37,446 bases of DNA from Pelomyxa schiedti (lineage: Eukaryota > Protista > Evosea). Both the position numbers and the translations under genes were made by a program. Below, piece by piece: positions 3,049 through 37,207 of this stretch. The notes below the pieces were generated by a model. That model worked only from the letters and a program-made list of their open reading frames with translations, ran no database searches and was not told the origin of the DNA. The stretch spans positions 1 to 37,446 of the forward strand of contig JAHLWZ010000445.1 of the NCBI GenBank assembly GCA_020536535.1, written 5' to 3'. Within the stretch, counting starts at the first letter, position 1; each line of letters opens with the position of its first letter.

Positions 3049-6000
3049 TTAGAGTGCACTGTTTGGTGTGGGGGATGAGGTACGGGATTTCTTTGTGGAT
3101 GTTGTGCCGGCTGTTGATTGTGGGTTTAGTTGTGGTCCTGCCGTTGTGATGGGAGGGAGTGTGGGATTGGAAAGAGGAGGAGGCCTTTTATGAGGGAGTG
3201 ATGTGAAGTTGGAGAAGAACGAAGAGTCATCCTCCTCGTCATTCTCACTACTGATACCACCACTGGCTGTTGAAGCGGTTGTTGCCTCACAAGGGGGCGT
3301 GTTTGCGGTGGGTGTTGCATGTGATTCGTTTGTTGTTGTGGCGGTGGAAGAGGTGGTGTCACTGGAGTGTGATTCCGCTGAACTTGTGGTTGCTGATGTG
3401 GAATTTGTTTGATGATTGTGGTGCATTGGTGTGGTGCCCACGTTGGTTGGCGGTTGTGCCAAGTTTTGATTGAGGATGCTTGTGATTGTATCGAAATCGG
3501 GTCTGACCTGTTGTTCTTGGTCCCAGCACTGATGGTAGACGAAGAAGAAATTGAGTATTCAGAAAGGGTTGAGAAAGAGTGAAACCTTGAGCATCAGTTG
3601 GTACATGAACTCCGGAGTGTTGGGGGGTTGGGGTAGCCGGTAGCCTCTCTCAATTTCCGATATTATTTCAGCTGCACGCATGGGCTTATAAGGCGACTTG
3701 CCGCCGCTGTACATTTCCCACAGAAGCTGGGGTTCGTTCAGATGTCTGTCAGGGGTGGGTAGAATACCACTTACAACGCCAAAGCTCCAGACATCACTCT
3801 TCTTGGTCGTGATGCAATGCTGCAGGGTTTCTATCGACGCCCAAGGAACTGACGCATTTCGCATAGTGTTATTATTGCCAGGGCTGAGAACCTTCACACT
3901 GAGTCCAAAATCTGCAATCTTTAAGAGGTTAAATTTACCGTGGTTAAAAGGCAGTTACTAACCTTAAGTTGCATCCCTTTGCTGAAGAAAGTATGGAAGT
4001 ATTGTGAACGAAATTATGCCATCAAAGAATTGAAACTACCTCCCACTCATGCAAAATAAAATGTTTCCTGGGTGATGGAGAAAATGAACGTTAAAATCAG
4101 TAACAAGAAGGCATACTGGCGGCAAGGTCTCTGTGCCAAGATTAAGTCAAAATCCAGTTGCATTTGAGATACCTGTGGAGAATCGAGTTTCTGTGAAGAT
4201 ATGCCATTCCACAAGATATATCTCTTTACATTCGATCACTTAGGGAAAAAACGAACTTTTGGCAACATTGAAAAGTCAAGGAGCGTAGTAAACTGTTGCT
4301 CTTCTGTCCTCAAGTAGTTTAGTAGACAGCCATCCGCCAATTCTAGTCCGGTGTATTGTTTGTTATATTTAAGCTTAATATTTACGTTGGAATATTTGTT
4401 TACCAGTGACAAGGGAGAGATGTGCATCCACCATTGAAAGTCCGTAAAACTGTGCCGCAATAAGAAAAAAAAAGACTCATAGCAGCATCAGAAATAACCT
4501 GAATGATATTTGGATGACATAGTTGACTAAGGAGAGAAGCTTCGCTTAGAAGATCGGGCATATTGGTTACTTGAAAAACTTGTTTCACGGCAACAGGTGT
4601 GGTTCCTTCCCAATTACCCCTGTACACCTATGTGCAGTTACTTTCCCGAGGAAAAATTGGAAAAGAAATACCACTCCGAAGGCACCCTGCCCAAGTACAT
4701 TGCTGGTCATCACACCGTTGATCATCAACTTTTTAAATGACACTTTGGATCTTGCAAGAAGTAGTTTCTCCAGGGACAAAGGAGAGAGGCCCAGCTTTTC
4801 AAATCGGTCCCTATTTGATTGTTCATATTGAGAGGAACTTTGCAACGAACAACTTTGGTAACTGCTGCATGTCTCGTACAGTGACTTGGTTGTGCGAAAG
4901 CAAGTCTATGTAACTTTCCAGGCCATACTCTGAGAGTGCTTCTTTGGAGACAACTGTACAGAATTCTTATGGATGAGGAAGGCGTGTGTATAAACCTTCA
5001 GTTTCTGTGGGAGTGGAATTGTTCGGTACAATACTTCCAGTTAAATCAGTTTTGCCAGAGGGTGGTAGAGGTAGCGTAGATAGAGAGCCTGTTTCCTGAG
5101 TGTGCAGATGTGCTGGGGGTACTTGATGAACTATCAGGTTGGGGTTGGCCCCCCCACAATCAATGGAGCAGCATTGACAGCCTGTCCTATCCTTTCGACC
5201 TTCAGGAATTTGACCAACAATGCTTGAAGAGCTCGTGCAAGGTGACGTTGCAGACATTGCAGAAGAAAGGGTTTCTGGTGCTGTGTTGGACATTACGGAA
5301 AGGGTTTGAGAGGCTGTAAGTTGAGTGAGTGTTTGTTTCATTTTTGTGTAAATTGCTGTGTTTTTCAGGATGCCCCCAATAGAATTTGCAACAAGCTCAA
5401 CCAGGTCAATTACTTCTGGTGTGAATTTATTTGGCTCATAATCAGCAAGCTGTGGCACACGGGCGTTATTTTGAACAATAAGAAACAGTACACACGCACG
5501 TGAATGAGGCCAATAGCTCTTGTTTCAACAAATATCGGTACTAGTAGTATTGATAAAAACTTTTCCTTTAGGCACACCCCACGAATTTTACATCCTGTGT
5601 TTGTTACCTACGACAGATAAATTACTTCACATTTGAAATGAGTTGAGGGACTTGATTACCACATCGAGGTCCAATGAAGAATCTCCATTGTTAGTTACAA
5701 ATGAACCGCGGTGTGAGAACCAAGGTCGCCCAGGTTCTGTTATGCCAAGGATAACTGTTCCACACCTTGAGATTTATAGTTTATTTGTGTTCCCTCTTTG
5801 GATAAGATGTACATGCAATCCAGTTGATAGGGTAATGAGGTTCCTACAAAGGTTGAGTTTCTCCCATGTTGCACATACACTTACCGCTATTAAGCATTCT
5901 CTTGCCATCAACACATTTTACAAGTGAATTTTCAGTCCTTAGAAAGTCGTCAGTGAATCCCTCACTACAGTAAAAAGGGAAGTTCCCACGGTCCACCAGA

Positions 6001-21100: not shown

Positions 21101-23554
21101 CTCTGATATATTACACTGTACAATACGTAAATCAAAAAGCCTAAGCATTGTCCCATTTGAGGTGAATCCTTCAGTTTGTACCCTATCAAACTAATGAGGG
21201 AGGTACCGCAACTTGACAACACAGGAATACTTTTGGCAAGAACAAAAAACGCCCACCCAAACTGAAAGAACACATCTTCAAGACTCTCGGCTTGCTGCCT
21301 AGGTGTTGGGATTATAAGTGCGGCAAGGGTTGTGGTGACTAGGAATACCTAGTGGAAGTCGAACAGACCAAAAAACAGGAAAAGGTGTCTTTATAAAGGC
21401 CCACTAACTTTTTGGCAATCTCCCAATTGCTTGAAATGCTCTACTTTATTTAGTGGAGAAGCTTATCAAGAGGCATACCATTACTGCCTGGTGCAAGTAA
21501 GAGCCTCCAATGATTTGAAGGAATTGATCCATATAACTCAGGAAGGAGTTTAAACTGATTGAGAATAAGGATACTAAAATTAGGAAAAAGAGGCGTGCCC
21601 TAAGCTGAAGTACTGCAGTAAGTCAGACAGTTGCAGTTCGGTTTCTACGTCAATATTTTGGGTGGGGTCATATTTGGAGTTTCTTTTCCATCGCGCACGT
21701 ACAAAGCGTTTCATCCCATAATAGCACAGCAAACAGCAGACGTAAATGTGTTCGGGGATTCCACAGGATTCGTACTGAATGGGTAAGTTCGCCCCTTTAC
21801 TGACATATAATCATTATTCATACTTGATAACGTGTCATGGCTTGCTCCACAATCATCCCTAGAGGTTGGCTGACTCTGAAATGTTCCAGCACACTAGGAA
21901 GGAACGCTTGACCGCCAAAAGAATACGAAACGGGAGTCAGGGAGACTGGTGGCCTCGCCATAACCTCTGGGGCTGCCTGAATTGCAGGTGTTGGAAGACA
22001 AGCCGCCGTGGTGGCGATACCATAGCCTTGGGTTGCCAGCATGTCCATTTGGACTTTCATCCTTTCCTCCAATCTCCGCCTCACAATATCTTGTTGCTCT
22101 GGCGGCATTTGCTGTTCCTGGCTAACATGGTCCTGTGGAACTGGGAATTCGCGAACCGGGTCATGCTTCTCCCTCTGTTTCGGCTCATTCACTTGGGTTA
22201 TGACACAGTCCTCCTGCTCTCGCTTAACTTGAATACGCTGTGGTGCAGAAGCCCTCGAATTTCTCATGTCATTGGCATCGGCGGCAACACCACCACTACC
22301 ACCTGATTCTCCATCTCTTGAGGGCCCATTTTCCCTCGTATTTTGTGGTTGCACAATCTCCACTCGCGTTACCTGGATGGGTACAGGAGGCACGGGTATG
22401 GGTGTGGGTACAGATGTGGATGTGATGGAACTAGACACATTTGCCCCTGTTACTTGCCGCGGCTGCTGTGGCTGTGGTTGTGACTGTTGTGTTTTCTGTT
22501 GAGGTTGTTGTTGCGCTGGGGGTGTTGATATGTTGGGGCCATCCTGCTGTGTCTGTTCGCTAATGTCCTCACGCTCACGTTTGCATTTGGTTGCCGCAGG
22601 TGTGGGTCCCAGTGTAATGCAGGTAGTATTTGTGGTGCTTTGTGTGCCCACAGAAGCCGTTCCACTTCCACAGTACTGCTGTTGCTGTGAATGTGTTTGT
22701 GATTGTGATTGTGATTGTGGTTGTAGTTGTTGGATCAGCTGAATGTAGGGCTGTGCGGCGGTTGTGCTGGTCACCGTGATCACCCCGCCACAACCGCAAC
22801 CACCACCGATCACACTTGTTGATGCTGATGCTGCTGCTGCGGTGGTGGTGGCGTCGCCAATGGGCATTGGAATCGGGGCGATGTACCCCTCGTTGTTGTT
22901 GGCGTAGCCACTGCTGCCACCACTGGTGCTGGTGGCCGCGGCGCCTTTGGCCGGTGTGGGCGCGGGGGCGGGGGCAAGGGAGGGGGGAGGAGCGGCCGGC
23001 GGGGAGAGGAAGTGGTGGTTGTGCGTGATCGGCGTGAACAGCTCGCACTGCATGGCGGGGGCGGGCACGGTGCGGGCCGTGGCCCAGGGGTCCCGGTACA
23101 TCCCCGCCTCGTGGTGCTGCCGCCCCCCCGGTCCTCCCCCTCCCCCACCTCCCCCTCCTCCCCTTCCCGCTCCTCTGCCGCCGCCTCCGGTTCCGGTGCA
23201 TGCACCTCTGCCGCCGCCGGTGGAGGACGCTGGGCCGGGCGGGGGTGGGGGCTGCGTGGGGGGGGGATGGTACACGACGATCGGGGGAGCGGGGCTGGGC
23301 ACGGAGGACACGGGGGACAATGCCACTTGGTGCTGGTGTGTGATGTGCTGCACGTGGGTCTGTGCCGGGGCAACACCAACCGTGGTCGTCGTGGTCGTGG
23401 TCGCTGCTGTACCGTGTTGCTTTGGTTGTTGTTGTTGTTGTTGGGGCGGTGGTTGCTGGGGAGTAGGATTCCGGTTGATTATGACGGGACTGGATGGTGG
23501 TGGTGGTGTAGACGATGAAGGGGGCACAACCACAGCCGCTATTTGCCGCTGCAT
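18189..23554 (-). CDS. RB1: Retinoblastoma family pocket protein with very long disordered N-terminal extension
   Basis: RB-N: HIYVCCLL..LSDLL, FQFGWAFFVLAK. Pocket A: SWLQSIL, FLQSIACIC..IERTHDLILLSEGW. Pocket B: LMLDRHVDHIILSSLYAVCKV..LTFTELVGQY, DIIEFYNKVY. C-terminal FIFGRSP..KINEAV. ORF 21818..23554 splices in frame (CAA|gtatga...cag|TAC) into RB-N. Confidence 0.88.
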
Positions 23555-23662: not shown

Positions 23663-25252
23663 TTACATGGAATTGGAGCCTCCTGAGGCTAACTGGGTCT
23701 CAATGAGTTTGAGCTACAGAAACACGTTAGAGCATTGGGGATTTGTCGTTATACACACAATTCTCTGGTTCTGCTTGTACTTGGCTTCTAGCGTCTTTAT
23801 CAGTGGTGTACAGCCGTACTCTATCAAGCGGCACAGGGACTTCTCATAAACGGCTTTGTTGTGCAAAAGTGTCAGGGTTGGTGGCAACCTTTTGGAAGCA
23901 GCGAGATTAGGTGACAGAAGGTTTATTGAAAGATACAGACTTAGTCGGAGAAACAACGGATTTCATGTATGAGTCATGTTCTTCTCTCTGCATGTTCTCT
24001 TGCATTTGGGCCAACTGTGATATTACTGGAACTGGTTGATTTATCACTTGCCTCAGGATGTTAATCGGGATATTGATTTCTTGTGGTCTAGCAGGAAAAG
24101 CCCATTAAATAAAAGTTGGAAAAAAAAAATAAGGATGATAGGTTACAAACCCTTCTACTGTGATCCGCAAATAGAAGAGAAAAGATAATAAAGTAAGTTT
24201 TTAGAAGTGGGAGGTAACGCAAACATGTTTGAAAAGATTGGAAGGCAATATATTGTACATGGCCAATCTTTATGCGGTTACCAGTATCAAGTACGTGAGA
24301 GAAAGAAAACCTTCTTTGCCGCATCGTGGTTGAAGCAAGAGAAAATGAGACCAACAAAAGTAGGATCCATAGTCTGCCAAATAGCTTGAGTGCGGAGATC
24401 TGCACAAGATAAACTAAAAATCTTACTGAATCCGAATTTTCACATACCCACGTGAGATGGGTGCACAGTGATATGTGGATGTGAGTGATACCATCCAACA
24501 ATGCGCGTTCGGCGATGTATCCTCTCTGACAACCTCTACCAAAAACAGGTCAGAATCCCAATCACCGCGCACGCGCGGTACAAACCTCAGCCTCAGCGGT
24601 AGCCCAGGCCAGCTGCTCGCTCGATATCTCGACCCTATCTTTCTTCTTGTCACTCCTCTCGAGCATCAGGACTCCCCACACGCCAACAACGAGCCCCCTG
24701 TGGTCCAACACGCAGTCGCCCAGCAGCAGACCCATAATTTCCTCCTTCTCGGTCGCCAGGGCGTGGGCGAAGCACACAAAGTAGCACTCGGCCGACAGTT
24801 GCACCGTGTACGGCCTCTTCACCTCCTGCGCCCCAGTCGCCCCGCCCCCGGTGCCCGGCGTCGTGCCCGCGCCCGTGCTGGTCGCGGGGACGGCGGCGGC
24901 CACGGGGCTCGTGCCGCTGGAGCCCACGCGGGCCGCGGTGGCGGTGGTGGTGGTGTAGGGCTGCGGGGTCAGCAGCGTGGGGATGGGCGAGGACGCCGTG
25001 GCGGGGCCGCCCTGCATCGACGTGGTGTCGAGCTGCAGCAGGGTGATGGTGCCCGTGGTGGCCTGCGGGGGGGGCCGTGGTCGGGGAGAGCAGCAGGGCC
25101 GTGGGGGACAGCACAGAAGTGGCGGGGGGAGACGGGGCGGTGGTTGTGGCGGGGAGCGGCTGGAGGTAGCGGTTGAGTGTGGTCTGTTGGGGGAGGTGCT
25201 GCTGGGGGGGCTGCGCGCCCGTGGCGGAACTACCGTTGGGTGTTGTGTTCAT
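23663..25252 (-). CDS. BRCC3: BRCC36-like JAMM/MPN+ K63 deubiquitinase
   Basis: AHALATEKEEIMGLLLG, RSDKKKDRVEISSEQL, IVGWYHSHPHITVHPSHV|DLRTQ, FVGLIFSCF and LHNKAVYEKSLC. The 5' end is ambiguous because of a frame switch at G8 25067-25074 (alternative start 25017). Confidence 0.92.
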
Positions 25253-25469
25253 CGTCTGTTGGTTCCTGTGTTTGATCAACAATTTTGGATCTGGCCCGTG
25301 GACAGGCCGTGGGGCACACAGAAACTGGTACTGCTAAGTGCACTATGTTGGCTCCATGGATAATGATTGGGTGGGTGCATCACTTGTCCTTATGATGAAA
25401 GAACACCGATCAGTGTCGATTTTATTGGGTTCAGGGCAGGCAGGGTAGGGAGTAGAAAACGAGGGACTG

Positions 25470-28400
25470 ATGCAATCAGTGAAGCTTGTGTGCGTTGGGG
25501 ACGGGACGTACAAGACGCGGTTGTTGATAGCGTACACGACCAACGTTGGTGACCCAGAATACATACCCACTGTGTTTGACAACTACACTGCTGCCGTGGT
25601 ATGTGCACGTGCACGTGCGTGTGCATGTGTGCGTTGTTCAGTGCCTTTTGGGGTTTTTTTTTCTTGTTCTGGCAATTGGCTAAGAGGGTACTGTTTGTTT
25701 TTGTAGATTATTGACGGGAAGCCTATATCTGCGGGTCTGTGGGATACAGCTGGTCAAACTGACTATGACAGGTGGGTGGGGAGATGACCCTACTGGTCGT
25801 ACTCTTACATTTCATTTTTTCAGGCTTCGGCCACTTTCATATCCTCAGACAGATGTCTTCCTTCTTGTTTTTTCAGTTCTTTCCCCCACATCATTTCAGA
25901 ACGCTGTCACTAAGGTGTTTTATACCTCCAATCTCCCTTTTTAACACACTTAATAGTGGTACGAAGAGGTTAACTTTCACTGCCCCTCAGCTGAAATACT
26001 TTTAATTGGTACCGAAATTGAAGGCCGCTCTGGAAATATACAGTGTGTCACGTATGCGCACCTCTTAGTACTGCACTCCAAACTTAATATTTAAGCCGGG
26101 AAGAAGCCATGGCTGAGGCTAAGAAAATCCACGCTGTGCAGTATATGGAATGCTCTTGCGCGACATTACAAGGTCTTGAGTAATTTATTCTTATTTTTCT
26201 GATTTTCCAGAAGGGGTGAGTAAGGTTTTTGAGGAAGGCAAGTCCATAATTGCACACTCCCCCCTCTTACCTCCACACAGCTCTTAGAGCCGCTATTTCT
26301 CCAGATACTGTTAGAAAGCAATCTGCGTTTTCTTCCTATAAAAGTTTACACAAACTAGAGGGTTTTATTTCCTCAGGAAAGTGGAAAGATGCTAGGTATC
26401 AATTTTACCACCACTGGGGTGCCAGGTCCTTGACAATTCTTTTCTTTAAGTAAAATGCTTCTTGAGAACGGAGTAAGACAGTCCGACATCGAGGGATTGG
26501 CTGAGATGGCCACCCAGAAGCATGGGAAAAAAGCTGCCGAGTTTCTCTTTATCCTGTACATGGGCCCTGTCAGTATTTAATAACTCAACTCTAAAAAAAG
26601 GTACAAGCGAGAGTTTCTGAATCCAACGTTCGCATTACCTGTTTCAGATAGTGAGATACCCCTATGGGAAGAGGACTGGCTGCGAAGACCGAAAATTATG
26701 GACGCAACAATTTGGAGATGTCTATATTCGCACTTTGCAGTCCGTATTGCTCAGTCTGCTCCCTCCACATGATTTATCTGACTAAAGTTGCAGAGCGCTG
26801 AAAGACTCACCAAATGCAGGACTTTCCCTCAAGGACTGTGCTCTCCAAATCTTTTTCCTTCCTTCTCAAGTCCCACCAACTCATCCCACGATACGAAACT
26901 TGCAAGAACTTGACTTAAGTGGCAACTTATTACAGTCTTTCCCCTCATCCTTCTTCGAATTTGCCCCATCTTTGGTTCGATTGAACCTCTCAAAGAATAA
27001 CCTGAAGGCAATCCCTTCTGGGATATCACACTCTTCACTGTTAGAGGTTAGACCTCACCTTTATTTGATCTAATTTAGCCATACTAGGCTGTAAACCTCT
27101 CTGGCAATTCCATTGACCGGGTGCAGGAATGGCGAGTCCAGTCAGGTTCACTGGAGGGTGAGATATTCAAACTCCCAGCACTGGCTGAACTTAATCTGGA
27201 AGACAATCGCCTGACTTCTGTACCACTCACCCTTGTGCAACTTGCTTTACGTCCTAGGTGAACGACCATCACTAACTTTACTGAAACTAGACCAGATTTA
27301 CATTGAAGCTTGGTGGTAACACTGGTTTGGCCATTCCACCTGAAGCCCTGACGGACTCAGCTGATCTTGTCCAGTATTTCACAAGCCTTTTGAAAGGTGG
27401 CCTTTTTTTAATCCTTCTGTTATTTATGATTCAAAGGTGAAATGATACCTTGGGAGACAGTGAAACTTGTCACTGTCGGCCAGGTGCAACTTCTAGATTT
27501 CTCCTTGTCCTGACTCTGACTCCTTCTCCATGGTAGGAAAATGTTGGAAAAACATCCCTTCTTGGCAAATTGCAAAATCTTATCACTGATGGCATGAGCA
27601 CAGATGGTATCTGCATAGGAAATCTCGCTCTTGGTATCACTCCCTCATATGTGCACTGGTCTCATGAAATCCTACAGGACAAACTAGATTCAGCACCTGG
27701 GACTTTGGAGGGCAGGAAGTGTACTATCCCACTCACCAAGTAGCTTTCTTCCTTCACACATAGAACTAATATCGCCGAAGTTCTTTCTTACAGGTTGTGC
27801 ACTTTACCTGGTTCTTTTCAATTTGTTCAATGAAGAACAATCACGCATTGACTATTGGCTGAAACAGATACATTCCCTTGCCAGCAGGTCTTTCACCAGA
27901 ATAATTCTGGTCTGGACTCCTTTTTTTGTTGGAAATAACTCACTTATTTCCAGGTTGCAACACACGTTGATGAATGGACTGAAGGAAGAAATTTACTTGA
28001 TGTGCACCTCAAACCCATCCTTGACAGATATCGCAAATTTGGTGTCAGAGTGAGTTTGCCTGCTTCATATTTCCCCTGAACTTGAAAAAGGATATTGTTG
28101 GTGTTTCCTGCACAACGGGAGCTGGATTAGGGAATCTGTGCTCATTACTCACCCAACTTTCTGCACGACCAGAATGTCAACAAGATGCTCTTTTAATATA
28201 TCTTGACCACTCATTTAGTTCACCGTCATGTCCACACTTATTGGTGCCGTCTCGCAAAAGAGATTGATGAACGGCGCGCAGTGAAGCCATACTTAACTTG
28301 GAATGAGTACATAGAACTTGCACAGTATGTACCAATGACACAAGAAATGCATGAAAGAACATTTAACAGATCATGTGGATTTGAGACCAACATACAGCGG

Positions 28401-31400
28401 GAGTGTGAAAACGCTGCGTCATTCTTACATGAAATGGGAGTATTACTTCACTTCAAAGATCCTCTCAGGTAATCCACTCCACAATTACGGGAAGGGTTTA
28501 CGAGACTATCTCAGTGACTTGGGCAACATTGTAATTATCAACCCTCAATGGTAGCAATTTTCTTACAGAGCACCTTTTTAACACAACTCAAGGCTTGCTG
28601 ATGTAATGGCTACCATCATGTGCGAAACTTCAAAATAATTATCCGTTGACTCCACATAAGAACAACCAAAGGAAATTTTGTTATAAATGGGACTTTGGAT
28701 CACTCAAATTTGGCACACCTGTGGAAAGGCAAGTACCCCATTGACATGCATGAATCGGTATTTTTTACCCTCAATTTGTTATAACTAATGCCGTTTGCCT
28801 TACAGCTCTTGCGTCTGCTATCCTTTTTTGGAGTGATGTTTCCCATGCGGTGCTCTCCACCAAAGGTTGTGTGGTGTATATTTTTTGGTGTCTCATTTCA
28901 CACAGTCTTTGGTGCCATGTCTTTTGGATGAAGAAATTCCATTGCCACAGGCACAGAGAGCATGGTAACATCCTAAACTCCAACTCAATTTTTCATAAGA
29001 TGTTCAAAGGCCAAAGCTCACTCCTAGAGGGATGACAGAGACCTCACGAATGTACACGTTCCCTTCTCTTCCTCTAGGATTTTTTGGGAGAATTGTTGCC
29101 AGACTTCTTTATCTTGATATAGTCCCTCTGGTATATCTATTTTCACTAGTCTTCTGAATTTTCTCTCAGTATTAAAGGTTCTCTGGAGGTATGGCATGGT
29201 GGCAACTGTCAATTCTGTCAATACGGTTTGCATACTTGTTGTCTGTCTACTTTCATAACCTATTTTAGGTGCTTCTATTGTACAAATTTGCTGAAAGTTC
29301 ATCGATTCATTCCGGTTCGTTTTCTTTTTCCACTTTGAGTTCTCATCTTTTGTCCCCTAGTGCACTCTTTATCTCTCTCACTGCGATCTGTCTCCAGAAT
29401 GGCTTACGCAGTTGCCTCTGAAATGGTAAAGTAATAGTTACTTAGAGACCTTAGATAGACCTTCAGATCAGTGAAAGTATAAATGGGACTGTCAATTGTT
29501 TCTACGAAAATGTCGCAAGTGAGATGGCTCAGTCTATTGTGTGTCCTGGTTGCATCAAGTCCCTGGATGGCATTTCTGACCAGCTCTCTGAACTTGTCAA
29601 ACCTCAGGGCCCACCTGAGCCAGTACTGATACCTGACTTAACGAAGGAGGATATAGTAAAAACTGGAGAGTTATTCTCTTTCTCGTAATTTGCCACCTTT
29701 TTGTACTTACACTAAATTTTATCCAGGTTGATGGATGTTATTCGTAAATTTCTTGGTGGATGCGACAGTATCCCCTGCCCAGGGATTAAGAAATTCCGGA
29801 GACTGCAAATCGTTGAGGGAATAGATCACAGAACCATGCACGAACCCTACTACACACCCCATACTGGGGGGAATGTTTTGTGAGCCTTATGACTTAGATT
29901 TGCTTCTAAATGGCACACAGAATCCGAGATTTAGCACCTGAGGTTACTATGGGTATTTTTCTTTGTGTCATGTCCTTTTCCAAATTTACCTGCTTAAACA
30001 AAGGTAGCTTTACTTTGATACACAGTGGTATTCAGAGGCACCAGTTGAAATGACATAACTGGTAATAGATTCCATTCAGTATGACCGCCTACACGACAAA
30101 CTTGGTGAAGGGGCTTTTGCCATTGCCTTCAAGTATGTTCTTCCTCGTTGTCTACCCCTTCTTTACATTCTCATTGAAGAGCTTCCTGGAAGGGGAAACA
30201 TGTTGCGGTCAAAGAATTGAAAGGCATTGCTTTCTCCCAAATTTCCTATTCTCACCCAATCTAGCATCACCAGAAGTGACCGAGTCTCCTGAGATAGTCA
30301 AAATCTTTCTCGATTTCAAACGAGAAGCAAGCATTATGCAGACCTGTACCTAAATTCTCACTTCCTTGGGTTTTTGTCATTTTTTCCCCAGTGCACCACC
30401 CCAACGTTGTTGAACTGTTTGGTATTATGTTTGATCCACTGCGTATTGTAATGTGCTTGGTGCCTTCAGGTTCCCTGGTAGGGCCAACATCCTTTTGAAT
30501 CGTTTCCTTAACTCTGTTCTCCTCACAGGATAAACTACTCAAGAAATCAAAGGTTATCTTCCCCGTTCTAAAACGTAATATTATTTCTGACTACAAAAAA
30601 GGAAAATAGTGATATGTTTCCTCCCAGCCTTCAAGTAATGCAGCTTTCCTTCCTGGTAACAATTTTTAACTGTATTAAGAATCGCATCATTGTCGATATT
30701 ACAAAAGGGTTATCCTTCCTGCATTCCCAGGTACCTCACAAACAAATGAGTATTTCTAAAAAACCCAGGAACCAGCGATCATCCACCGTGATCTCAGAAG
30801 CCCAAATGTATTCCTTGAGTGTCTTGATCCAGATTCCCCCACAGTAGCTAAAGTGACTCTTGAGAACCAACATGATATTCAACGCTAATTACAATCAGAT
30901 TGCCGATTTTGGGTTATCAGAGCGTCTTATTCCTCAAGCCAGTGGATTGCTGCTTACTTGGCAGTGGATTGCTCCAGAAGGTTTCATCTCTCGCTTATGA
31001 CACTGATAGTGATCGGCTTCACAGCAATGGATACCAGGATTTCTTCCTATGATGAAAAAAGTGATGTTTACAGCCTTGGTATGGTCATCCTTGAAACTTA
31101 TACCCGTGCACCACCCTTTGACGAGCTTTGGCTTGATCCTCGCTTTTGTAAACACATACCTGGCGAACCAGAGGGCCACCCAGGCGTACTTAACACTATG
31201 TCCATCAAATCCGCAATATGCTCAGTAAGTTTTCTGAGGAGTATTGCCTAATAATCACAAAACTTTGAAAAACCAAGGATGGACTCCGCCCTGTTTTGCC
31301 TGCAAGCTGTCCAGAAGTTATTCAGCAACTTCTTCTTGGAATGTGGGATCGTAATCCTCAAAATGTACTTCACATCATCATTTTACTTGATTCACGTTCC

Positions 31401-33189
31401 ATACATTTAAATGCCTCAGCGACCTGGTGCCAGTTTGGTGCTGAAGAAACTCAATGCTGCTTTTGGGATAGTGCAAAATGAACCACACGAGTCTTTTCAC
31501 AGCCCCCTGGTATTGTCAGTATAATACTTTGGCAGTTCTAACTCTCACCAAAAAGCGAAAGCTCACACGATTCAGCCGCGTCGAGATTGATTTACCTCCA
31601 CACCACAGGGTCGTTGTCTTTTCTTGATTTAATTCTTACCTGGTATTTTTTCTCAGGCCTGGGCAGTTATATGTGCAGGAGATTCCATTTGGTTTGGCAC
31701 TGAAAAAGAACAGAGTAAGGAATTGGGTTCCTCCAGAAACTCGGCCCACCTGCCGAACTTTCCAGAAGCCCCCAAAAAACCACCACCCCTTCCACAATCA
31801 TCCAAGATCTTGCCGCCAAAGCCGTCGGCAAAAGCACCTCCAAGGCCACCATCCTCACCAGCCACCCCTACTCCCCACGCAGAAACAGAGGTGCATTCCA
31901 GCTCAGGTTACGCCTGCATTTTCAACATTGCACCTCCAAAAGCACTGTGTGCATTGGAAATACAATCCTCGCGGGTGTATGGTCTTGTCAACCTTGGCTA
32001 TGGTAGACCTTTCCTTTTTGTATACTGTTCTTCACCGCTTCAAGATGTGTGGTGCTCAAGTGAGGAAGGTTTCATACACATTTTAAGGAGAGACACCCTC
32101 CTTGTAAAGAAGAAGGTTCGTAAAACTGCCTCGAATCTGCCCTTCCAACTTTTCCTTTCAGTTTATGCCCCATGCATCCGGACGAATGATCAAGTGCCTC
32201 ACACAAGTTACCACATTGGAAGGAGATTTACAGATATGGAGTTGCTCACCAAGCCCCTCTGACGGGTAAGACTTCAAACTTAACTGCACAATCCCACAAA
32301 AACCAATTGCAGGGAGATAGCAATTATTGATAGTAAGTACAATGTAATAGGCGCAATCCATGTAGATCAACCAACCAATTTTGGAGAACAAGTATTTCAC
32401 AAGATGCAATCAATTTTTATATATCCTTAACATTAAATAAGGTTTCAAGGGACCGGGTCTGGATTGGGTGTTACGCCTTGATTATAATCATTGACATTGA
32501 AACCCGCAAGGTTGCGATTGCCTGAAATTGTATGGATTAACCACATGAAGGAAGTGGAAAGATTTCCTTTAACAGCAAAAGCCAAAGTGACCGGGATTCT
32601 TTCGTGCCAACCTCGAGGTTCAATCGAACCCCTTGTGTGGGTTTCTTGTGGTCAAAATGTAAGTAACAAAGTTCCATATGCCGATTTAATGCCAATGAAT
32701 TTAACACCACGCAGATTTTCGGACTGGGCCTAAATAACAAGGAACTGATTTTCGCCATGGAGTTTGAAACCACAATAACATGCATGCAAGGGCTACTCAA
32801 TGACTTCATCCTATGCGGCGACGCGAACAGTAAAATTTATATCTACAGTTGAGTGGTTTTACCCATCCTACTAAACACAACCAAGCAATCAATCACACTT
32901 GACACAGAACCCCAAATGCTTACCATAAATAGGTATCAATGATAAGCACCACGAGCACCACCACCTCGTAACAACCCTCGAGGGTTTCCCCAAAAAACCT
33001 GTCAAAGCAATTGCAATAGTGTTGCCAACCACCACGTCTAATTCTTCCTCGGCATTGATGGCTGCACCCTCGCAGTCTTCCTCTGACGCCTCCTCGTCAT
33101 CAACAACCTCACACACCAACAACGACGTCAGCATCTGGGTGGCATACGGCAGCACTGACAAGGCCATTGTGTTCTCTGCCCTGTCCTAA
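25470..33189 (+). CDS. Roco-family protein: degenerate Rac domain - LRR - Roc - COR - TKL kinase - Pro-rich linker - WD40-like C-terminus
   Basis: Rac: [32 protein letters not shown]: [30 protein letters not shown]. Roc: VKLVTVGQ|[26 protein letters not shown]|FFLT, ATHVD. COR: [17 protein letters not shown]|LADVM. Kinase: [42 protein letters not shown]. The last exon 32933..33189 joins in frame. Confidence 0.9.
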
Positions 33190-33251
33190 GGAATAACAGA
33201 TTTCTCGTAAACACCGAGTGATTTCTCGCTAGAAGTGTTTGTCTTGCCGCA

Positions 33252-35745
33252 ATGTTCCCGGGGTTCGGGTTGCTGGACAAAGAAGCCGCCAACAACGCAA
33301 AGAACAGGTACTGAGGCTGCTCCCACAATCCCCACCCGCACGTTATTTATGCTCTGTTGTGGCGTCAGGGGGTGTCAAACTCAACAAAACCCAACCAAAC
33401 AGGGCGCAGGCCATAGTTGTCCCACCGAGTATTAAATTCAACAGCCGCACAAAACCAAGGGCCAAGGCCACCAAGAGTGGCTCCACCGCTGCCCCAAAAA
33501 GCAAGTCGGTAGCTCAAAACACCAAAACCCAGAGATCCACAATCACCACGCCGTCATTATCACCATCAAAGGGCTATAGACCCACAGATGGGGGCGTCGG
33601 CTATACCAACCCCCCCATCAGTGACACCCAACAACCCGAGCCACAGCAGCGCGATGACAATTACTACGGAAATGGCGATTATGCCAACCACACGACGCCG
33701 CCAGATGATCCCAACCCGGTGGAATCACCACGTGATCATCTCCTGGAGACGCAGTATGGTGACGGCGGGGTGGTGATGGATGAGCAGCCGAGTGAGATAA
33801 TAATGCCACAGCAGGAGGAGGAGGGGAAAGAGGAGGAGAGGCGCCCCGCGACACCAATTCCCGGCAATCTCGTTGGCAGGAGTGTCACTCCCGTGCATGG
33901 AAACGACACGGGTTCGTCAGCGTATGCGACGGAGGCGACAACAACCGCGGCGGATCAGAATCAGCAGCCATTTCGGGATTGGCAGTGCGCGACACCACAT
34001 GAACATGATGCTCCTGACCAAATTGGGAATGCCGGCGCATCAGAACAAGAAGAAGAAGTGGTCGAGGAATTTATTCCTGAGGAGGTCGCCGCCGAGGATC
34101 CCGAAATCCAGGCCTACCACGAGGTTGTGGAGGAGGAAGACCAGCAAGCTCAGCCGCGCGATCCTGCTGTAGATACCACCCAGACGACTACGCACACTGC
34201 ACAACAACCACCACCGGTATCTGCTCTCGAGGCAACTGACGGTGGGTGGGGAGAAATTCCCTGGGGCGATGTTGGAAACGACGAAAATGCAGAGGAAACT
34301 ATAGAACTTTCGGGGAATGGGCAAGATTTTGACGATATTTCCAGTGAGAATAACCCTGTTGTTGTAAATACCGACACACTTGTAAGTAACAACACTCTTG
34401 CTGATGAAAATATAACCACTGATGCCGTACCTGCTGTTGAACCAACGGCGGATACTGAAACATTAGAACCTGAACCCACCGTCAATAGCACCGAAGTCAA
34501 CGAGGAATATCAGGAGGTAACCGCAAATCAGGACGTACAAGCTGCATCCGAATCCAATGTAAGAGAAGAACCGGAGTCACATGTAGAAATTGCAGTTCCC
34601 AGTCAAAACGACTCCCCACCTCGATTTAACCCAAGACAAACTTCGGAACTAGAACTTCCGGAAGCAGACGTACAGCACCATAGCCTTTCACATATTGATC
34701 CTCCCCAGACTAAATCCGTTAAAAGGTCGATTCGCCATGCGCACCCCCCAAAACAGGCACCTTCCACACATCACAACTCACAGCGTTTCGATGGATCGCA
34801 ATCATGCCGCTGTAATGATGATATTGACGCTGAAATAGAGTTACTTCAGGTAACTCTACAGCGGCTTATGGAAAAGAGAACACAGCATTCCAACCCTCTC
34901 CACTGTACAGCGCCCACCTCCCGCCATCCACCCTGTACAAATCACACATCTCACAGAAGACATTCGCCAAATTGCCCAAAGGCGCGCAAGTACCTGTGCC
35001 CAGCTTCTCGCCAGTGCAGTAGATGCAACCCCCCTTTGCATCATTGTCATTGCGTGGAATCCGGATACAACTACATCCCTCCGCCGGATTGTACTCATAC
35101 TCCCTATCAACCAAACTATAACATTCCGCCACCCCAACCGCCAGCGGTGGATTACAGTACGTAGCAACATTAAGGAATTCCCGGCACTAACTTCACTATA
35201 CAGACACTCTCCTCAGTGCGGCACTGAATCCTCCGCCACTTCCACAATTCACACCGCAAATGACAACCTCGTTCCCGCCGGTGTTCGGTCCGGCGTCCCC
35301 GCTGCTATCCACAGCAGCCCCCAACAACCTTTCCCAGCTTCTGGCCATTACCGAGATATACAACAACCAGCTAGCACTCATCCGCAACGCCGTCCAGCTG
35401 AGCTCCATGCTCCGCGCCACCCAAGGAGTCACACCGGCACCACAGCAAGCGACGGGCCCACCACCTGCTACCCCTCTGTTCTGCACCCATCCTCATCATT
35501 CACCATCACAACCAACGACAGCCTACTACAATACTACACCACCTTCTGCGCTCTCGGGCACGCATGCACACCACCGTCATTCATCCCCATCCTCGTCTCA
35601 CAACACCACTCGCCCAGGAACAGGCAGGGTGCACCATCACAATCACAATCACAATCACAGCCAAGATACACAACCACAATCACCGGCAACAACAGAAGCA
35701 CACCGGCAACCACAACTCGTCCATCACCACGCAATGCACTCTTGA
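33252..35745 (+). CDS. Large intrinsically disordered acidic protein with short coiled coil and Cys/His-rich segment; function unknown
   Basis: ATG 33252. An intron at ~33308-33370 joins into the 641-aa ORF, and an intron at ~35159-35203 joins it in frame to ORF 35260..35745. No family recognised. Confidence 0.7.
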
Positions 35746-36008
35746 TGTTGTTGATACACAATGGTTGTGTGACGACTCTAAGAACGCACACGTTCCACTA
35801 CCAGATTGCGGAAAAAAAAATTGATTTCTGGACGTTCCCGGGAGGCAATCAAAACCCCAAACGTAGAAACGGAAAAAAAGAAGCCCCAAAACCCAACCCC
35901 TGGGGCCGCTTACTTCTCGTCCTTTTAAACAACCAAAAACCACGACAAAAAGAAAACAAGTCACACAGCACAAGACAACAACCACCAAACAACAAGCAAA
36001 CAAACAAA

Positions 36009-37207
36009 ATGCAGAAACTCCTAGTTGCGCTCCTCTTCGTTGCAGTTGTCAGCTGCAGCAGCATCCGATCACAGTTCGACGAGTGGACGCACCAGTACGG
36101 CCGCACGTACGCCACGCGCCAGGAGCGACTCCACCGCTACAACGTCTGGAGGTCCAACCTTCAGCTCGTCACGGACCACAACTCCAACTCCAAGAACACA
36201 TGGACCCTCGGCATGAACCAGTTCGCCGATCTCACCGTCGACGAGTACCGCGCCATGCTCTCCGCCCCAAGGACACACGCCGCCGTCGAGGCTGTCAACT
36301 CGGTCCAGGCTGTCACACCAGTCGACTGGAGGGATCAGGGAAAGGTTTGCCCAATCAAGAACCAGGGAAGCTGCGGAAGCTGCTGGGCTTTCTCTGCAAT
36401 TGCGTATGTTATTCCTCCCTCTCTCTCTCGTTCTTCCCTATATATATTATACTATCTTACTTTACAAGGGGGTTTTATTTTAACCAATGTCTGCAGATCA
36501 ATTGAGAGCTGCTATGCCATTGATAACAATGTTGACCCAATTTGCCTTTCCGAGCAGCAGCTTGTTGATTGCGCCGGCATCAAGTACGGCGACTTGGGCT
36601 GCGGCGGTGGTCTCCCTGACAACGCCTTCCGATTCGTTATGGACAATGGATGCGAGACAGAGGAGGAGTACCCATACACAGCCAAGAGGGGAACCTGCGT
36701 GTAAGCGAATAACCCGGTTATCTATCTTGAAATAACCCTTATCTTCTCAGTGAGGATGCATCCAAGTACGTCGTACACATTGGTGGCCTTACTGATATTC
36801 CCTCTGGTGACGAGGCTGCTCTTCAAGAGGCCGTTGTTAAGGCACCAGTCTCTGTTGCCATTGATGCCAGCCTTGCTAGCTTCCAGTTTGTGACCCCAAA
36901 AACTCACCCATTTCTAACCTCCTGTACAGGCTGTACAAGGATGGAATCTACTGCCCAGACAAGTGCTCAAATGTCACACTTGATCACGGTGTTGATGTTG
37001 TAGGCCAGAACACAGATAACAAGGAGGACTACTACATCGTCAAGAACAGCTGGGGAACATCATGGGGAATTCAGGGATACATCTGGATGTGTGCCAACAA
37101 GAGTATGTGTCACCAATTCAAAAATGCATAACTAACTCGTTATAACAGACAACAACTGCGGTATTGCCACCGAGGCCAGCTACCCAACAAAGTGCTCCGG
37201 CAAGTAA
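36009..37207 (+). CDS. CTSL: Papain-family (C1A) cathepsin L-like cysteine protease with signal peptide and I29 propeptide
   Basis: Signal MQKLLVALLFVAVVSC; ERFNIN-like ERLHRYNVWRSN; GMNQFADLT; QGSCGSCWAFSA; LDHGV; KNSWG; NNCGIATEASYP. Confidence 0.95.

What the first reader, a model, noticed from the sequence alone, without database searches (positions are those of the whole stretch)
25470..27350. Roco protein carrying an N-terminal Rac pseudo-GTPase: two G domains in one LRRK-like kinase
Seen: the Rac domain has no stop or CAAX and splices in frame into the LRRs. The P-loop is GDGTYKT (25497-25517), one residue shorter than GDGAVGKT and lacking the Gly before Lys. G4 is GTEIE (26008-26022) instead of GTKxD. 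Switch [10 protein letters not shown] and G3 DTAGQ are intact, and the Roc domain keeps G1-G4. Known: Dictyostelium Rocos carry N-terminal RhoGEF, RhoGAP, RasGEF or myotubularin modules; I know of no described Rho-GTPase-Roco fusion. Inference: a nucleotide-independent Rac mimic that recruits or sequesters Rac effectors/GEFs/GAPs and couples them to the kinase.
Basis: partly seen in the sequence, partly recalled or inferred. Interest (0 to 1): 0.75.

Follow-up and report, generated by a model that had tools for sequence, protein, structure and literature searches.

The report
Rac-like head on amoeba Roco kinase
In the anaerobic amoeba Pelomyxa schiedti, one gene (with an old sister copy elsewhere in the genome) joins a worn-down Rac-type switch domain to a complete LRRK2-like Roco kinase, a natural fusion of two signalling parts that normally work as separate proteins.

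Summary
Window 25470-26303 encodes a Rac1-like G domain (E 1e-59 to human Rac1). It lacks the P-loop glycine before Lys, the TKxD guanine motif (here TEIE), the Rho insert and any CAAX box, while switch I and II are almost unchanged. It runs on through a tail and linker into LRR, Roc (G1-G5 intact), COR, an apparently active kinase and a conserved C-terminal region, ending at 33189.

The deposited model KAH3762641.1 ("Rho GTPase", 996 aa) already joins Rac, LRR, Roc and COR. It mis-splices the linker and stops before the kinase.

A collinear old paralog on contig C589 has the same layout, shared intron phases and a conserved linker with no ATG of its own. This makes two separate genes very unlikely. 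No RNA was available to me.

The architecture is not unique. Two sponge proteins are Rho-Roc-COR, other Pelomyxa Roco genes carry a Rab1-like head inside one uninterrupted ORF, and the scan noted such heads on other contigs of this genome (s1-607418, s1-611433). I found no paper describing it.

Function is inferred: most likely a Rac-derived docking module that ties the kinase to Rac regulators, perhaps GEFs. Loss of nucleotide binding is not shown.

The parts
25470..26303 (+). Rac-derived G domain, seven exons (25470-25598, 25707-25771, 25824-25914, 25957-26051, 26096-26172, 26214-26237, and 26281 onward). Canonical G fold, no Rho insert.
   Evidence: E 1.1e-59 to Rac1. Pfam Ras 148 bits on P0013 residues 5-165. 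57% identical to canonical P. schiedti Rac. AlphaFold2 pLDDT above 90 over most of residues 1-170. Exon map.
25497..25517 (+). Degenerate P-loop GDGTYKT. The Gly before Lys (Rac1 G15) is missing and the loop is one residue short. The paralog reads GDDGAHKT.
25560..25586 (+). Switch [10 protein letters not shown], intact (T35 kept).
25743..25757 (+). G3 DTAGQ, followed by a fully conserved switch II that runs on into exon 3.
26008..26022 (+). Degenerate G4: GTEIE in place of GTKxD. The paralog reads GTHIE.
26238..26280 (+). GC-AG intron inside helix alpha5. The paralog has a GT-AG intron at the same position and phase.
   Evidence: GC-AG introns are 1.59% of P. schiedti introns (PMC8887013).
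26304..26753 (+). Tail and linker: rest of exon 7 (to 26395), exon 8 (26451-26555) and exon 9 (26601-26753). Exon 9 is corrected here; the deposited model splits it wrongly into 26601-26627 and 26672-26743.
   Evidence: Exon 9 in frame 0 matches L005 1469-1621 at E 1.4e-7. The spliced tail and linker of the two paralogs give one 97-aa match, E 6e-16, against at most 24.6 bits in 200 shuffles. pN 0.47 against pS 0.75. Left-out codon scores are positive in these frames, computed for the deposited exons.
26794..27396 (+). Leucine-rich repeats (exons 26794-27046, 27088-27257, 27296-27396).
   Evidence: Pfam LRR_8 E 2.6e-9 on the exon. LRR_8 at P0013 residues 301-360.
27437..28175 (+). Roc G domain with G1-G5 intact.
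   Evidence: Pfam Roc 110 bits at P0013 residues 451-559. Motif coordinates.
28219..29565 (+). COR-A and COR-B.
   Evidence: COR-A 102.6 bits at residues 622-762. COR-B 20 bits, below the cut-off. Mapped to the genome.
29921..29952 (+). Small exon ([10 protein letters not shown]) that carries the frame past the deposited model's stop at 29938, using the donor at 29880 instead of 29875.
   Evidence: Conserved in the paralog at L005 5755-5811. Read directly.
30069..31470 (+). Protein kinase domain in many short exons. Motifs: G-loop GEGAFA 30104-30121, VAVK 30202-30219, HRDLRSPN 30784-30807, DFG 30902-30919, APE 30965-30979.
   Evidence: tblastn with Roco4-like relatives is collinear. Exon-level Pfam kinase hits. 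Motifs. Paralog match.
31657..33189 (+). Conserved C-terminal region of untested fold, in the position of the WD40 domain of LRRK2 and Roco4. Stop codon at 33187-33189.
   Evidence: Collinear with L005 7488-8766. Both copies stop a few codons after STDKA(I/L)VF. No Pfam hit.

Best explanation
This is one gene of about 7.7 kb (25470-33189, + strand) of Pelomyxa schiedti. Its protein runs: Rac-derived G domain, about 120 residues of tail and linker, LRR, Roc, COR, kinase, conserved C-terminal region. It is a complete amoebozoan Roco (LRRK2/Roco4-type) kinase whose N-terminal accessory module is a copy of the cell's own Rac. That copy kept the Rac fold and both switch regions. It lost the P-loop glycine, the guanine-specificity residues, the Rho insert and the lipid anchor. 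It therefore cannot act as a normal membrane-anchored GDP/GTP-cycling Rac. The architecture and the motif pattern are shown. The function is inferred: the domain most likely works as a built-in Rac-shaped docking surface. The specific guess is that, like the laboratory mutant Rac1 G15A, which cannot hold nucleotide and clamps onto active exchange factors, it ties the kinase to Rac GEFs, or to other proteins that read the Rac switch regions. That would place or gate Roco kinase activity where Rac signalling is switched on.
For: One gene:
- The deposited model P0013 (KAH3762641.1) joins Rac, LRR, Roc and COR.
- Contig C589 carries a collinear paralog from the Rac start codon to the stop codon, matching window 25467-33174 to L005 203-8766.
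- The two copies share intron positions and phases, including the phase-2 introns at the exon 7/8, 8/9 and 9/LRR junctions.
- The spliced tail and linker align as one 97-aa match across two splice junctions, E 6e-16, against at most 24.6 bits in shuffles.
- pN is 0.31-0.47 against a saturated pS of 0.75-0.80 in the Rac, linker and LRR parts.
- In C589 there is no in-frame ATG between residues 194 and 319, so the conserved linker can only be translated from the Rac start.
- GC content is even from 25600 to 33100, with no GC-rich island between the Rac and LRR parts.
- In sister genes on C562 and C1001, a Rab1-like G domain, LRR and Roc lie in one uninterrupted ORF.

Rac-derived and worn down in a directed way:
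- E 1e-59 to Rac1.
- In a tree, the C445 and C589 domains are sisters (96/95) inside the canonical amoebozoan Rac clade (97/96) and sit on long branches.
- Of 87 columns conserved in at least 85% of 40 Rho relatives, base-contact positions changed in 5 of 6 against 16 of 81 elsewhere (p 0.003). Switch I plus II changed in 1 of 29 against 20 of 58 elsewhere (p 0.001).
- AlphaFold2 gives a confident G fold.

GEF-trap analogy:
- Rac1 G15A cannot bind GDP or GTP and has high affinity for GEFs (PMC3408411).
- W56 and the switch II surface that GEFs read are kept. That they are the GEF-binding surface is from my own knowledge of Rac-DH structures.
Against: No RNA evidence was available to me, and the deposited model is demonstrably wrong in two places. 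Both paralogs keep K16, T17, T35, D57, G60 and Q61, residues whose known role is Mg2+ and phosphate binding and hydrolysis. Both also keep a conserved T-x-I-E at G4. This fits residual or re-specified nucleotide binding better than a truly empty pocket. In nucleotide-free G domains the switch regions are usually floppy, so their strict conservation may serve another partner, including the protein's own LRR or kinase. No partner has been identified. The GEF idea rests on analogy with a point mutant.
Confidence: 0.6

Rival explanations
1. The Rac-like head still binds a nucleotide. It may have relaxed or changed base specificity, or be permanently loaded, and it acts as a second real switch that gates the kinase. 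The protein would then have two working G domains.
For: K16, T17, T35, D57, G60 and Q61 are kept in both paralogs although dS is saturated. G4 is T-E/H-I-E in both copies, so the acidic residue at the D118 position is conserved as Glu. The paralog keeps an aromatic residue at F28 (Y), a canonical SAK at G5 and a P-loop of normal length.
Against: Neither copy has the Gly before Lys, and G15A alone abolishes GDP/GTP binding in Rac1 (PMC3408411). K116 is lost in both. The window copy also lost F28 and one P-loop residue.
Confidence: 0.3
2. The head works inside the molecule. Its conserved switch II would be a tethered substrate or pseudo-substrate of the Roco kinase, or it would bind the protein's own LRR or Roc-COR to hold the kinase off or on. 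It would not recruit outside partners.
For: LRRK2 phosphorylates Rab GTPases in switch II (abstract of PMC13174679). Rab GTPases bind the N-terminal part of LRRK2 and activate it (PMC9576273, PMC10708890). Removing the N-terminal LRR region makes Dictyostelium Roco2 constitutively active, and Rab1A-GTP regulates it (PMC3128523). The same genome fuses Rab1-like domains to Roco genes.
Against: Nothing here tests contacts. The structure model has no usable confidence outside the head. Rac switch II differs from the Rab motif that LRRK2 targets (my own knowledge).
Confidence: 0.25
3. These are two separate genes, a tail-less Rac-like gene and a Roco gene, wrongly merged by gene prediction.
For: If intron 7 is retained, the Rac frame stops at 26451-26453 and an ATG follows at 26455. 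My own path search showed that stop-free splice paths can be threaded through almost any sequence here. The deposited model has errors.
Against: The arrangement, linker sequence and intron phases are kept in the old paralog. The C589 linker has no ATG. There is no room for a promoter. The retained-intron tails are not conserved.
Confidence: 0.05
4. The head is a decaying relic with no function of its own.
For: Long branches and several broken motifs.
Against: pN is 0.31 against a saturated pS. Switch I and II are almost invariant in both copies. The changes are concentrated in base-contact positions rather than spread evenly.
Confidence: 0.05

Closest known systems
Amoebozoan Roco kinases of the Dictyostelium Roco4 type, and human LRRK1/LRRK2
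   Same: LRR-Roc-COR-kinase core, followed by a C-terminal domain. The Roc motifs and the kinase motifs (VAVK, HRD, DFG, APE) are present. The closest database relatives are dictyostelid and Physarum Roco kinases at 30-38% identity.
   Different: The N-terminal module is a Rac-derived G domain rather than ARM/ANK, RhoGEF/RhoGAP or myotubularin. None of the 119 nearest relatives has it. The fold of the C-terminal region was not confirmed as WD40.
IMLRK proteins of Entamoeba and Dictyostelium (inactive myotubularin + LRR + ROCO + kinase; PMC2927912)
   Same: An enzyme-derived, apparently inactive module sits N-terminal to LRR-Roc-COR-kinase in Amoebozoa.
   Different: The module there is a dead phosphatase, not a G domain. 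In many Entamoeba IMLRKs the Roc domain is also degenerate, whereas here Roc is intact.
LRRK2 with Rab29/Rab12/Rab8/Rab10, and Dictyostelium Roco2 with Rab1A (small GTPase acting in trans)
   Same: A small GTPase engages the N-terminal part of a Roco kinase and controls recruitment or activity (PMC9576273, PMC10708890, PMC3128523).
   Different: Here the G domain is covalently attached, belongs to the Rho family rather than the Rab family, and has no lipid anchor.
Rab1-like-Roco genes of the same genome (C562, C1001; scan notes s1-611433, s1-383193, s1-620765)
   Same: A small-GTPase head followed by LRR-Roc-COR-kinase, in the same organism.
   Different: The head is Rab1-derived with intact GTKCD and ETSAK motifs, and it shares a single exon with LRR and Roc. 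The Roco cores are only about 35% identical to this one.
Dysidea avara (sponge) predicted proteins P0424 and P0429
   Same: An N-terminal Rac/Cdc42-like domain, then a Roc-like G domain and COR-A. P0424 also has a P-loop one residue short and degenerate switch motifs.
   Different: They have no LRR and no kinase. Their Roc-COR is only distantly related. Their Rho domains do not group with the Pelomyxa ones, so the fusion is most likely independent.
RhoBTB/RacA and Miro (atypical Rho domain at the N-terminus of a multidomain protein); Rac-WD40 and Rac-BTB-U-box proteins of P. schiedti
   Same: A Rho-family domain without CAAX heads a larger protein.
   Different: The partner domains differ (BTB, EF-hand plus second GTPase, WD40). 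In the tree they form separate clades from the Roco heads.
Rac1 G15A, RhoA G17A and Cdc42 G15A nucleotide-free mutants
   Same: Loss of the same P-loop glycine with intact switch regions. The best PDB match to the whole domain happens to be a Rac1 chain carrying Ala at that position.
   Different: Those are engineered point mutants. The natural domain has further changes, and its nucleotide binding has not been measured.

Membership tests
Roco proteins | Roc G domain with G1-G5 motifs | tested here: met
   Pfam Roc 110 bits at P0013 residues 451-559. GQENVGKT, DFGGQ, THVD and SCTTG located.
Roco proteins | COR domain directly after Roc | tested here: met
   COR-A 102.6 bits at residues 622-762. 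COR-B 20 bits, below the 27-bit cut-off.
Roco proteins, kinase group (LRRK/Roco4 type) | LRR before Roc and a protein kinase after COR in the same polypeptide | tested here: met
   LRR_8 hits. Kinase exons 30069-31470 are collinear with Roco4-like relatives and with the paralog. The frame can be carried from COR to the kinase through a conserved small exon. Continuity rests on the paralog and homology, not on cDNA.
Roco proteins, kinase group (LRRK/Roco4 type) | C-terminal WD40 propeller | tested here: inconclusive
   A conserved region of about 1.5 kb follows the kinase in both paralogs, but it has no Pfam hit. Its fold was not predicted.
Roco proteins | GTP binding by Roc and dimerisation through COR | not testable with these tools
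   Biochemistry is needed.
Rho/Rac small GTPases | Rho-type G-domain sequence and fold | tested here: met
   E 1.1e-59 to Rac1. Nested in the amoebozoan Rac clade, 97/96. pLDDT above 90.
Rho/Rac small GTPases | Walker A P-loop GxxxxGK[ST] | tested here: not met
   GDGTYKT in the window, GDDGAHKT in the paralog. No Gly before Lys.
Rho/Rac small GTPases | [N/T]KxD guanine-specificity motif | tested here: not met
   TEIE in the window, THIE in the paralog.
Rho/Rac small GTPases | Rho insert helix | tested here: not met
   A deletion of 9-10 residues in both paralogs.
Rho/Rac small GTPases | C-terminal CAAX box for prenylation | tested here: not met
   The frame continues into the tail and linker. 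No Cys-aliphatic-aliphatic-X end exists in any reading.
PseudoGTPases | G fold that has lost nucleotide binding and/or hydrolysis | not testable with these tools
   The motif pattern points that way, but the phosphate and Mg2+ ligands are retained. Binding assays are needed.

The most novel reading that the evidence does not exclude
Pelomyxa has repeatedly welded small GTPases to the front of Roco kinases: a Rac-derived head here and on C589, and Rab1-derived heads on C562 and C1001. Read as Rosetta-stone fusions, these would mean that reading a small GTPase's switch surface is an ancestral, general input of Roco/LRRK kinases. The Rac head would then be a nucleotide-independent clamp for Rac exchange factors, or a tethered pseudo-substrate, that wires the kinase directly to sites of Rac activation. 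That is a Rho-family input not yet established for LRRK-type kinases.
Probability: 0.25. Interest if true: 0.8.

Novelty: new variant of a known kind. Interest (0 to 1): 0.6.

Why it matters
How small GTPases switch LRRK2-type kinases on is a central open question in Parkinson's research, and so far it rests on Rab proteins acting in trans. A natural, selected, covalent fusion of a Rac-shaped domain to a full Roco kinase gives a compact system for studying that question. Such a fusion, and Rab1-shaped ones in sister genes, could show which surface of a G domain a Roco kinase reads. It could also show whether nucleotide state matters. It adds a clear case to the short list of pseudo-GTPase domains embedded in signalling enzymes. 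Finally, it shows that the deposited gene model is wrong in its linker and cut short before the kinase.

Tried and rejected
1. Looking for paralogs by crossing contigs with COR-A hits against contigs with Rac exon-1 hits gave none. This test was faulty: intron-rich Roco genes do not score, and the window's own locus is absent. A search with P0013 then found C589.
2. I hand-built two splice paths through the linker. Option A (frame 1) is rejected by the paralog. Option B's frame and 3' donor proved right, but its 5' junction with exon 8 did not. The deposited path is also wrong for exons 9' and 10'.
3. A home-made exon-chaining search threaded an open frame to the end of the window. So 'it splices in frame' is not evidence by itself here.
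4. Codon-score support for the linker is positive but weak, because predicted exons are chosen for such scores.
5. Alignment of 70 long proteins failed. Alignment A1 put the Rho rows on the Roc domain and was dropped in favour of A2.
6. The look-up of encoding contigs gave nothing for P0013, since records of the window's own genome are left out. No tool reaches RNA reads, so transcripts could not be checked.
7. Pfam on single short exons of the Rac C-terminal half, COR and kinase was mostly blank.
8. My corrected spliced model (exon 9 fixed, extended through the kinase) has no reference. It was therefore not sent to any search or folding tool. Joined translations were built only inside scripts from coordinates for local alignment. 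The searches and the fold used the deposited protein P0013 or single exons by reference.
Full report
WHAT IS THERE

The window is contig C445 of Pelomyxa schiedti. The organism name comes from the GenBank record of the encoded protein.

The ATG is at 25470. The P-loop GDGTYKT lies at 25497-25517, switch [10 protein letters not shown] at 25560-25586, DTAGQ at 25743-25757 and GTEIE at 26008-26022.

Exon 1 alone finds Rac1, RhoG and Rac3 in the PDB at E about 8e-11, with a one-residue gap in the P-loop. The whole domain scores E 1.1e-59 against human Rac1 and 148 bits on Pfam Ras.

Compared with the two canonical Rac genes of the same genome (contigs C93 and C449), the domain is 57% identical. 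It differs in these ways:
- The Gly before the P-loop Lys is missing.
- F28 is changed to G.
- TKxD is changed to TEIE.
- 9-10 residues of the Rho insert are deleted.
- The G5 motif SAL is changed to SCA.
- There is no CAAX box.

AlphaFold2, run on the deposited protein with a Rho-domain alignment, gives a confident canonical G fold for residues 1-170. Nothing beyond that is usable.

THE REST OF THE GENE

A search of 1.8 billion representative proteins with the first LRR exon returned the deposited protein KAH3762641.1, named "Rho GTPase [Pelomyxa schiedti]", 996 aa (my id P0013).

Pfam on P0013 gives Ras at residues 5-165, LRR at 301-360, Roc at 451-559 (110 bits), COR-A at 622-762 (103 bits) and a weak COR-B. 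The protein maps to 33 exons separated by introns of 38-55 nt, plus one of 108 nt. The genome paper says the models were made with Augustus and refined with PASA/EVM and single-cell transcriptomes. It also reports 7.4 introns per gene and 1.59% GC-AG introns, and it does not mention Roco proteins or GTPases (PMC8887013).

Downstream of the model's stop, kinase exons at about 30069-31470 are collinear with Roco4-like relatives. They carry [21 protein letters not shown] and APE.

IS IT ONE GENE?

In-frame splicing alone proves little here. My own exon-chaining search could thread an open frame to the end of the window.

The decisive evidence is a paralog. A search of the genome with P0013 found contig C589 (locus L005). 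Stop-free pieces of the window from 25467 to 33174 match L005 203-8766 in the same order. That order is Rac head, tail, linker, LRR, Roc, COR, a small bridging exon, kinase, C-terminal region. Both copies stop a few codons after the same motif.

Intron positions and phases are shared. The window's GC-AG intron (26238-26280) is a GT-AG intron in C589.

The spliced tail and linker of the two copies align as one 97-residue match that crosses the 7/8 and 8/9 splice junctions. It has 32% identity, 55 bits and E 6e-16, while 200 shuffles reach at most 24.6 bits.

Synonymous sites are saturated (pS 0.75-0.80). Against that, pN is 0.31 in the Rac head, 0.47 in the tail and linker, and 0.31 in the LRR exon. 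All three parts have therefore been kept as protein in these frames since an old duplication.

In C589 there is no in-frame ATG between residues 194 and 319. The conserved linker can be translated only from the Rac start codon. Only these two loci hold linker exon 9. GC content is even from 25600 to 33100, with GC-rich islands only upstream of the ATG.

CORRECTIONS TO THE DEPOSITED MODEL

The paralog shows two errors.
- Linker exon 9 is a single exon, 26601-26753, in frame 0 (E 1.4e-7), followed by a 40-nt intron. It is not the two exons of the deposited model.
- The stop at 29938 results from choosing a donor six bases too early. With the donor at 29880, the conserved exon [10 protein letters not shown] (29921-29952) carries the frame on to the kinase.

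My corrected joined model has no reference. I did not send it to any search or folding tool. Joined translations were made only inside scripts, from coordinates, for local comparison.

WHERE THE HEAD CAME FROM AND HOW IT HAS CHANGED

In a tree of 25 Rho-family domains, the C445 and C589 heads are sisters (96/95). They lie inside the clade of canonical amoebozoan Rac (97/96). They have long branches, and they sit apart from the RhoBTB-type, Rac-WD40-type and sponge sequences. The rows were chosen, and none was dropped after the tree was built. This points to one fusion of an ordinary Rac before the duplication.

Both copies share the loss of the P-loop glycine (Y in one, H in the other), the loss of K116, D118 changed to E, the loss of the Rho insert and the loss of CAAX. 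The window copy lost one more P-loop residue, F28 and the G5 alanine.

I examined the 87 columns conserved in at least 85% of 40 Rho relatives:
- Base-contact positions changed in 5 of 6, against 16 of 81 elsewhere (p 0.003).
- Switch I plus II changed in 1 of 29, against 20 of 58 elsewhere (p 0.001).

This is not random decay. Guanine recognition was given up while the switch surfaces were kept.

HOW IT MOST LIKELY WORKS

What is shown: a Rac-shaped domain without a lipid anchor, without the canonical nucleotide pocket and with intact switch regions is held covalently in front of an intact Roc-COR-kinase.

What is inferred: it serves as a docking surface for proteins that read Rac. Rac1 G15A, which lacks the same glycine, cannot bind GDP or GTP and binds active GEFs tightly (PMC3408411). 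By analogy, the head may clamp the kinase onto Rac exchange factors.

The main rival is that the head still binds a nucleotide. Both copies keep K16, T17, T35, D57, G60 and Q61, and both keep a conserved T-x-I-E at G4. A second rival is an intramolecular role as a tethered substrate, pseudo-substrate or regulator. That idea is modelled on three observations:
- LRRK2 phosphorylates Rab switch II.
- Rabs bind the LRRK2 N-terminus.
- Dictyostelium Roco2 is controlled through its N-terminal LRR region and Rab1A (PMC13174679 abstract, PMC9576273, PMC10708890, PMC3128523).

COMPARISON WITH WHAT IS KNOWN

The Roco core is an ordinary, if divergent, amoebozoan Roco kinase. Its best relatives are 30-38% identical, and none of the 119 nearest has a Rho head.

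I searched long proteins carrying a Rho domain. In the 548-1743 aa range only P0013 combined Rho with COR. In the 914-2907 aa range two predicted proteins of the sponge Dysidea avara did so. They read Rho-like, Roc-like, COR, without LRR or kinase, and one has a P-loop that is also one residue short. Only the best 120 hits of each search are listed, so weaker cases could be missed.

In the same genome, contigs C562 and C1001 carry a Rab1-like G domain, LRR and Roc inside a single uninterrupted ORF. This partly confirms earlier scan notes of Rab1-like Roco genes (s1-611433, s1-383193, s1-620765). One unchecked first-reader note reports a Rac/Rho-like head on a Roco on another piece (s1-607418). 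That piece may be C589, but I could not verify this.

The nearest concept in the literature is the amoebozoan IMLRK family, which pairs an inactive myotubularin with LRR/ROCO/kinase (PMC2927912). The Roco reviews and both archamoebal genome papers do not mention a Rho or Rab head on a Roco.

VERDICT

The architecture is real with high confidence, although RNA proof is still missing. The pseudo-GTPase reading is plausible but unproven, and the partner is unknown. This is a new variant of a known kind. It is already present, mislabelled and truncated, in GenBank, and I found it described in no paper I could search.

Noticed in passing
window 26601-26753 and 29875-29952: The deposited model KAH3762641.1 mis-splices the linker into two exons in a frame the paralog does not conserve. 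It also ends at 29938 through a donor chosen six bases too early. The gene really runs on through a kinase to a stop at 33187-33189.
   Followed up: yes
L006 (G000:C562:35000-42000) 1004-2203 +; L007 (G000:C1001:15000-22000) 4812-5951 -: Single uninterrupted ORFs of 400 and 379 codons hold the C-terminal two thirds of a Rab1-like G domain (E 2e-31 to Rab1A, GTKCD and ETSAK intact), then LRRs, then the start of Roc. A kinase lies downstream on C562 and COR-B lies downstream on C1001.
   Followed up: partly
L005 (G000:C589) 4664-5518: The paralog carries a 285-codon Ser/Thr/Pro/His-rich insert between COR and the kinase. The window copy lacks it.
   Followed up: no
P0424, P0429 (Dysidea avara, sponge): Predicted Rho-like + Roc-like + COR proteins without LRR or kinase. 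P0424's Rho P-loop is one residue short (GDCVGKS) and its switch I and G3 are degenerate.
   Followed up: partly
P0250, P0426, P0467 (P. schiedti); P0469, P0154 (Mastigamoeba); P0438 (Capsaspora): Other N-terminal Rac-domain fusions occur: Rac-BTB-U-box and Rac-WD40. The WD40 type is shared by Pelomyxa, Mastigamoeba and Capsaspora and forms its own clade (99/99).
   Followed up: partly
window 22900-23500 and 24700-25300: Two islands of 65-76% GC stand in a window that is otherwise about 43% GC. The second lies directly upstream of the gene's ATG. Its nature (promoter, low-complexity exon or other) is unknown.
   Followed up: no
window 33233-36704 +: Very long stop-free stretches (643 and 616 codons in different frames) of low-complexity, 52-61% GC sequence lie just after the Roco stop codon. 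There is no Pfam hit.
   Followed up: no
window 36880-37128 +: A stop-free piece reads like the C-terminal part of a papain-family cysteine protease (NSWGTSWG...). This was judged by eye only.
   Followed up: no
window 3460-4695 -: Kinase-like matches on the minus strand to the kinase domains of Roco relatives. This is probably the tyrosine-kinase-like gene noted earlier on this window (s1-400248).
   Followed up: no
G000, whole genome: At least 74 six-frame matches to COR-A exist in a 52-Mb genome, many in open frames of 600-1200 codons. This is a very large Roco expansion. Intron-poor and intron-dense members exist side by side.
   Followed up: partly
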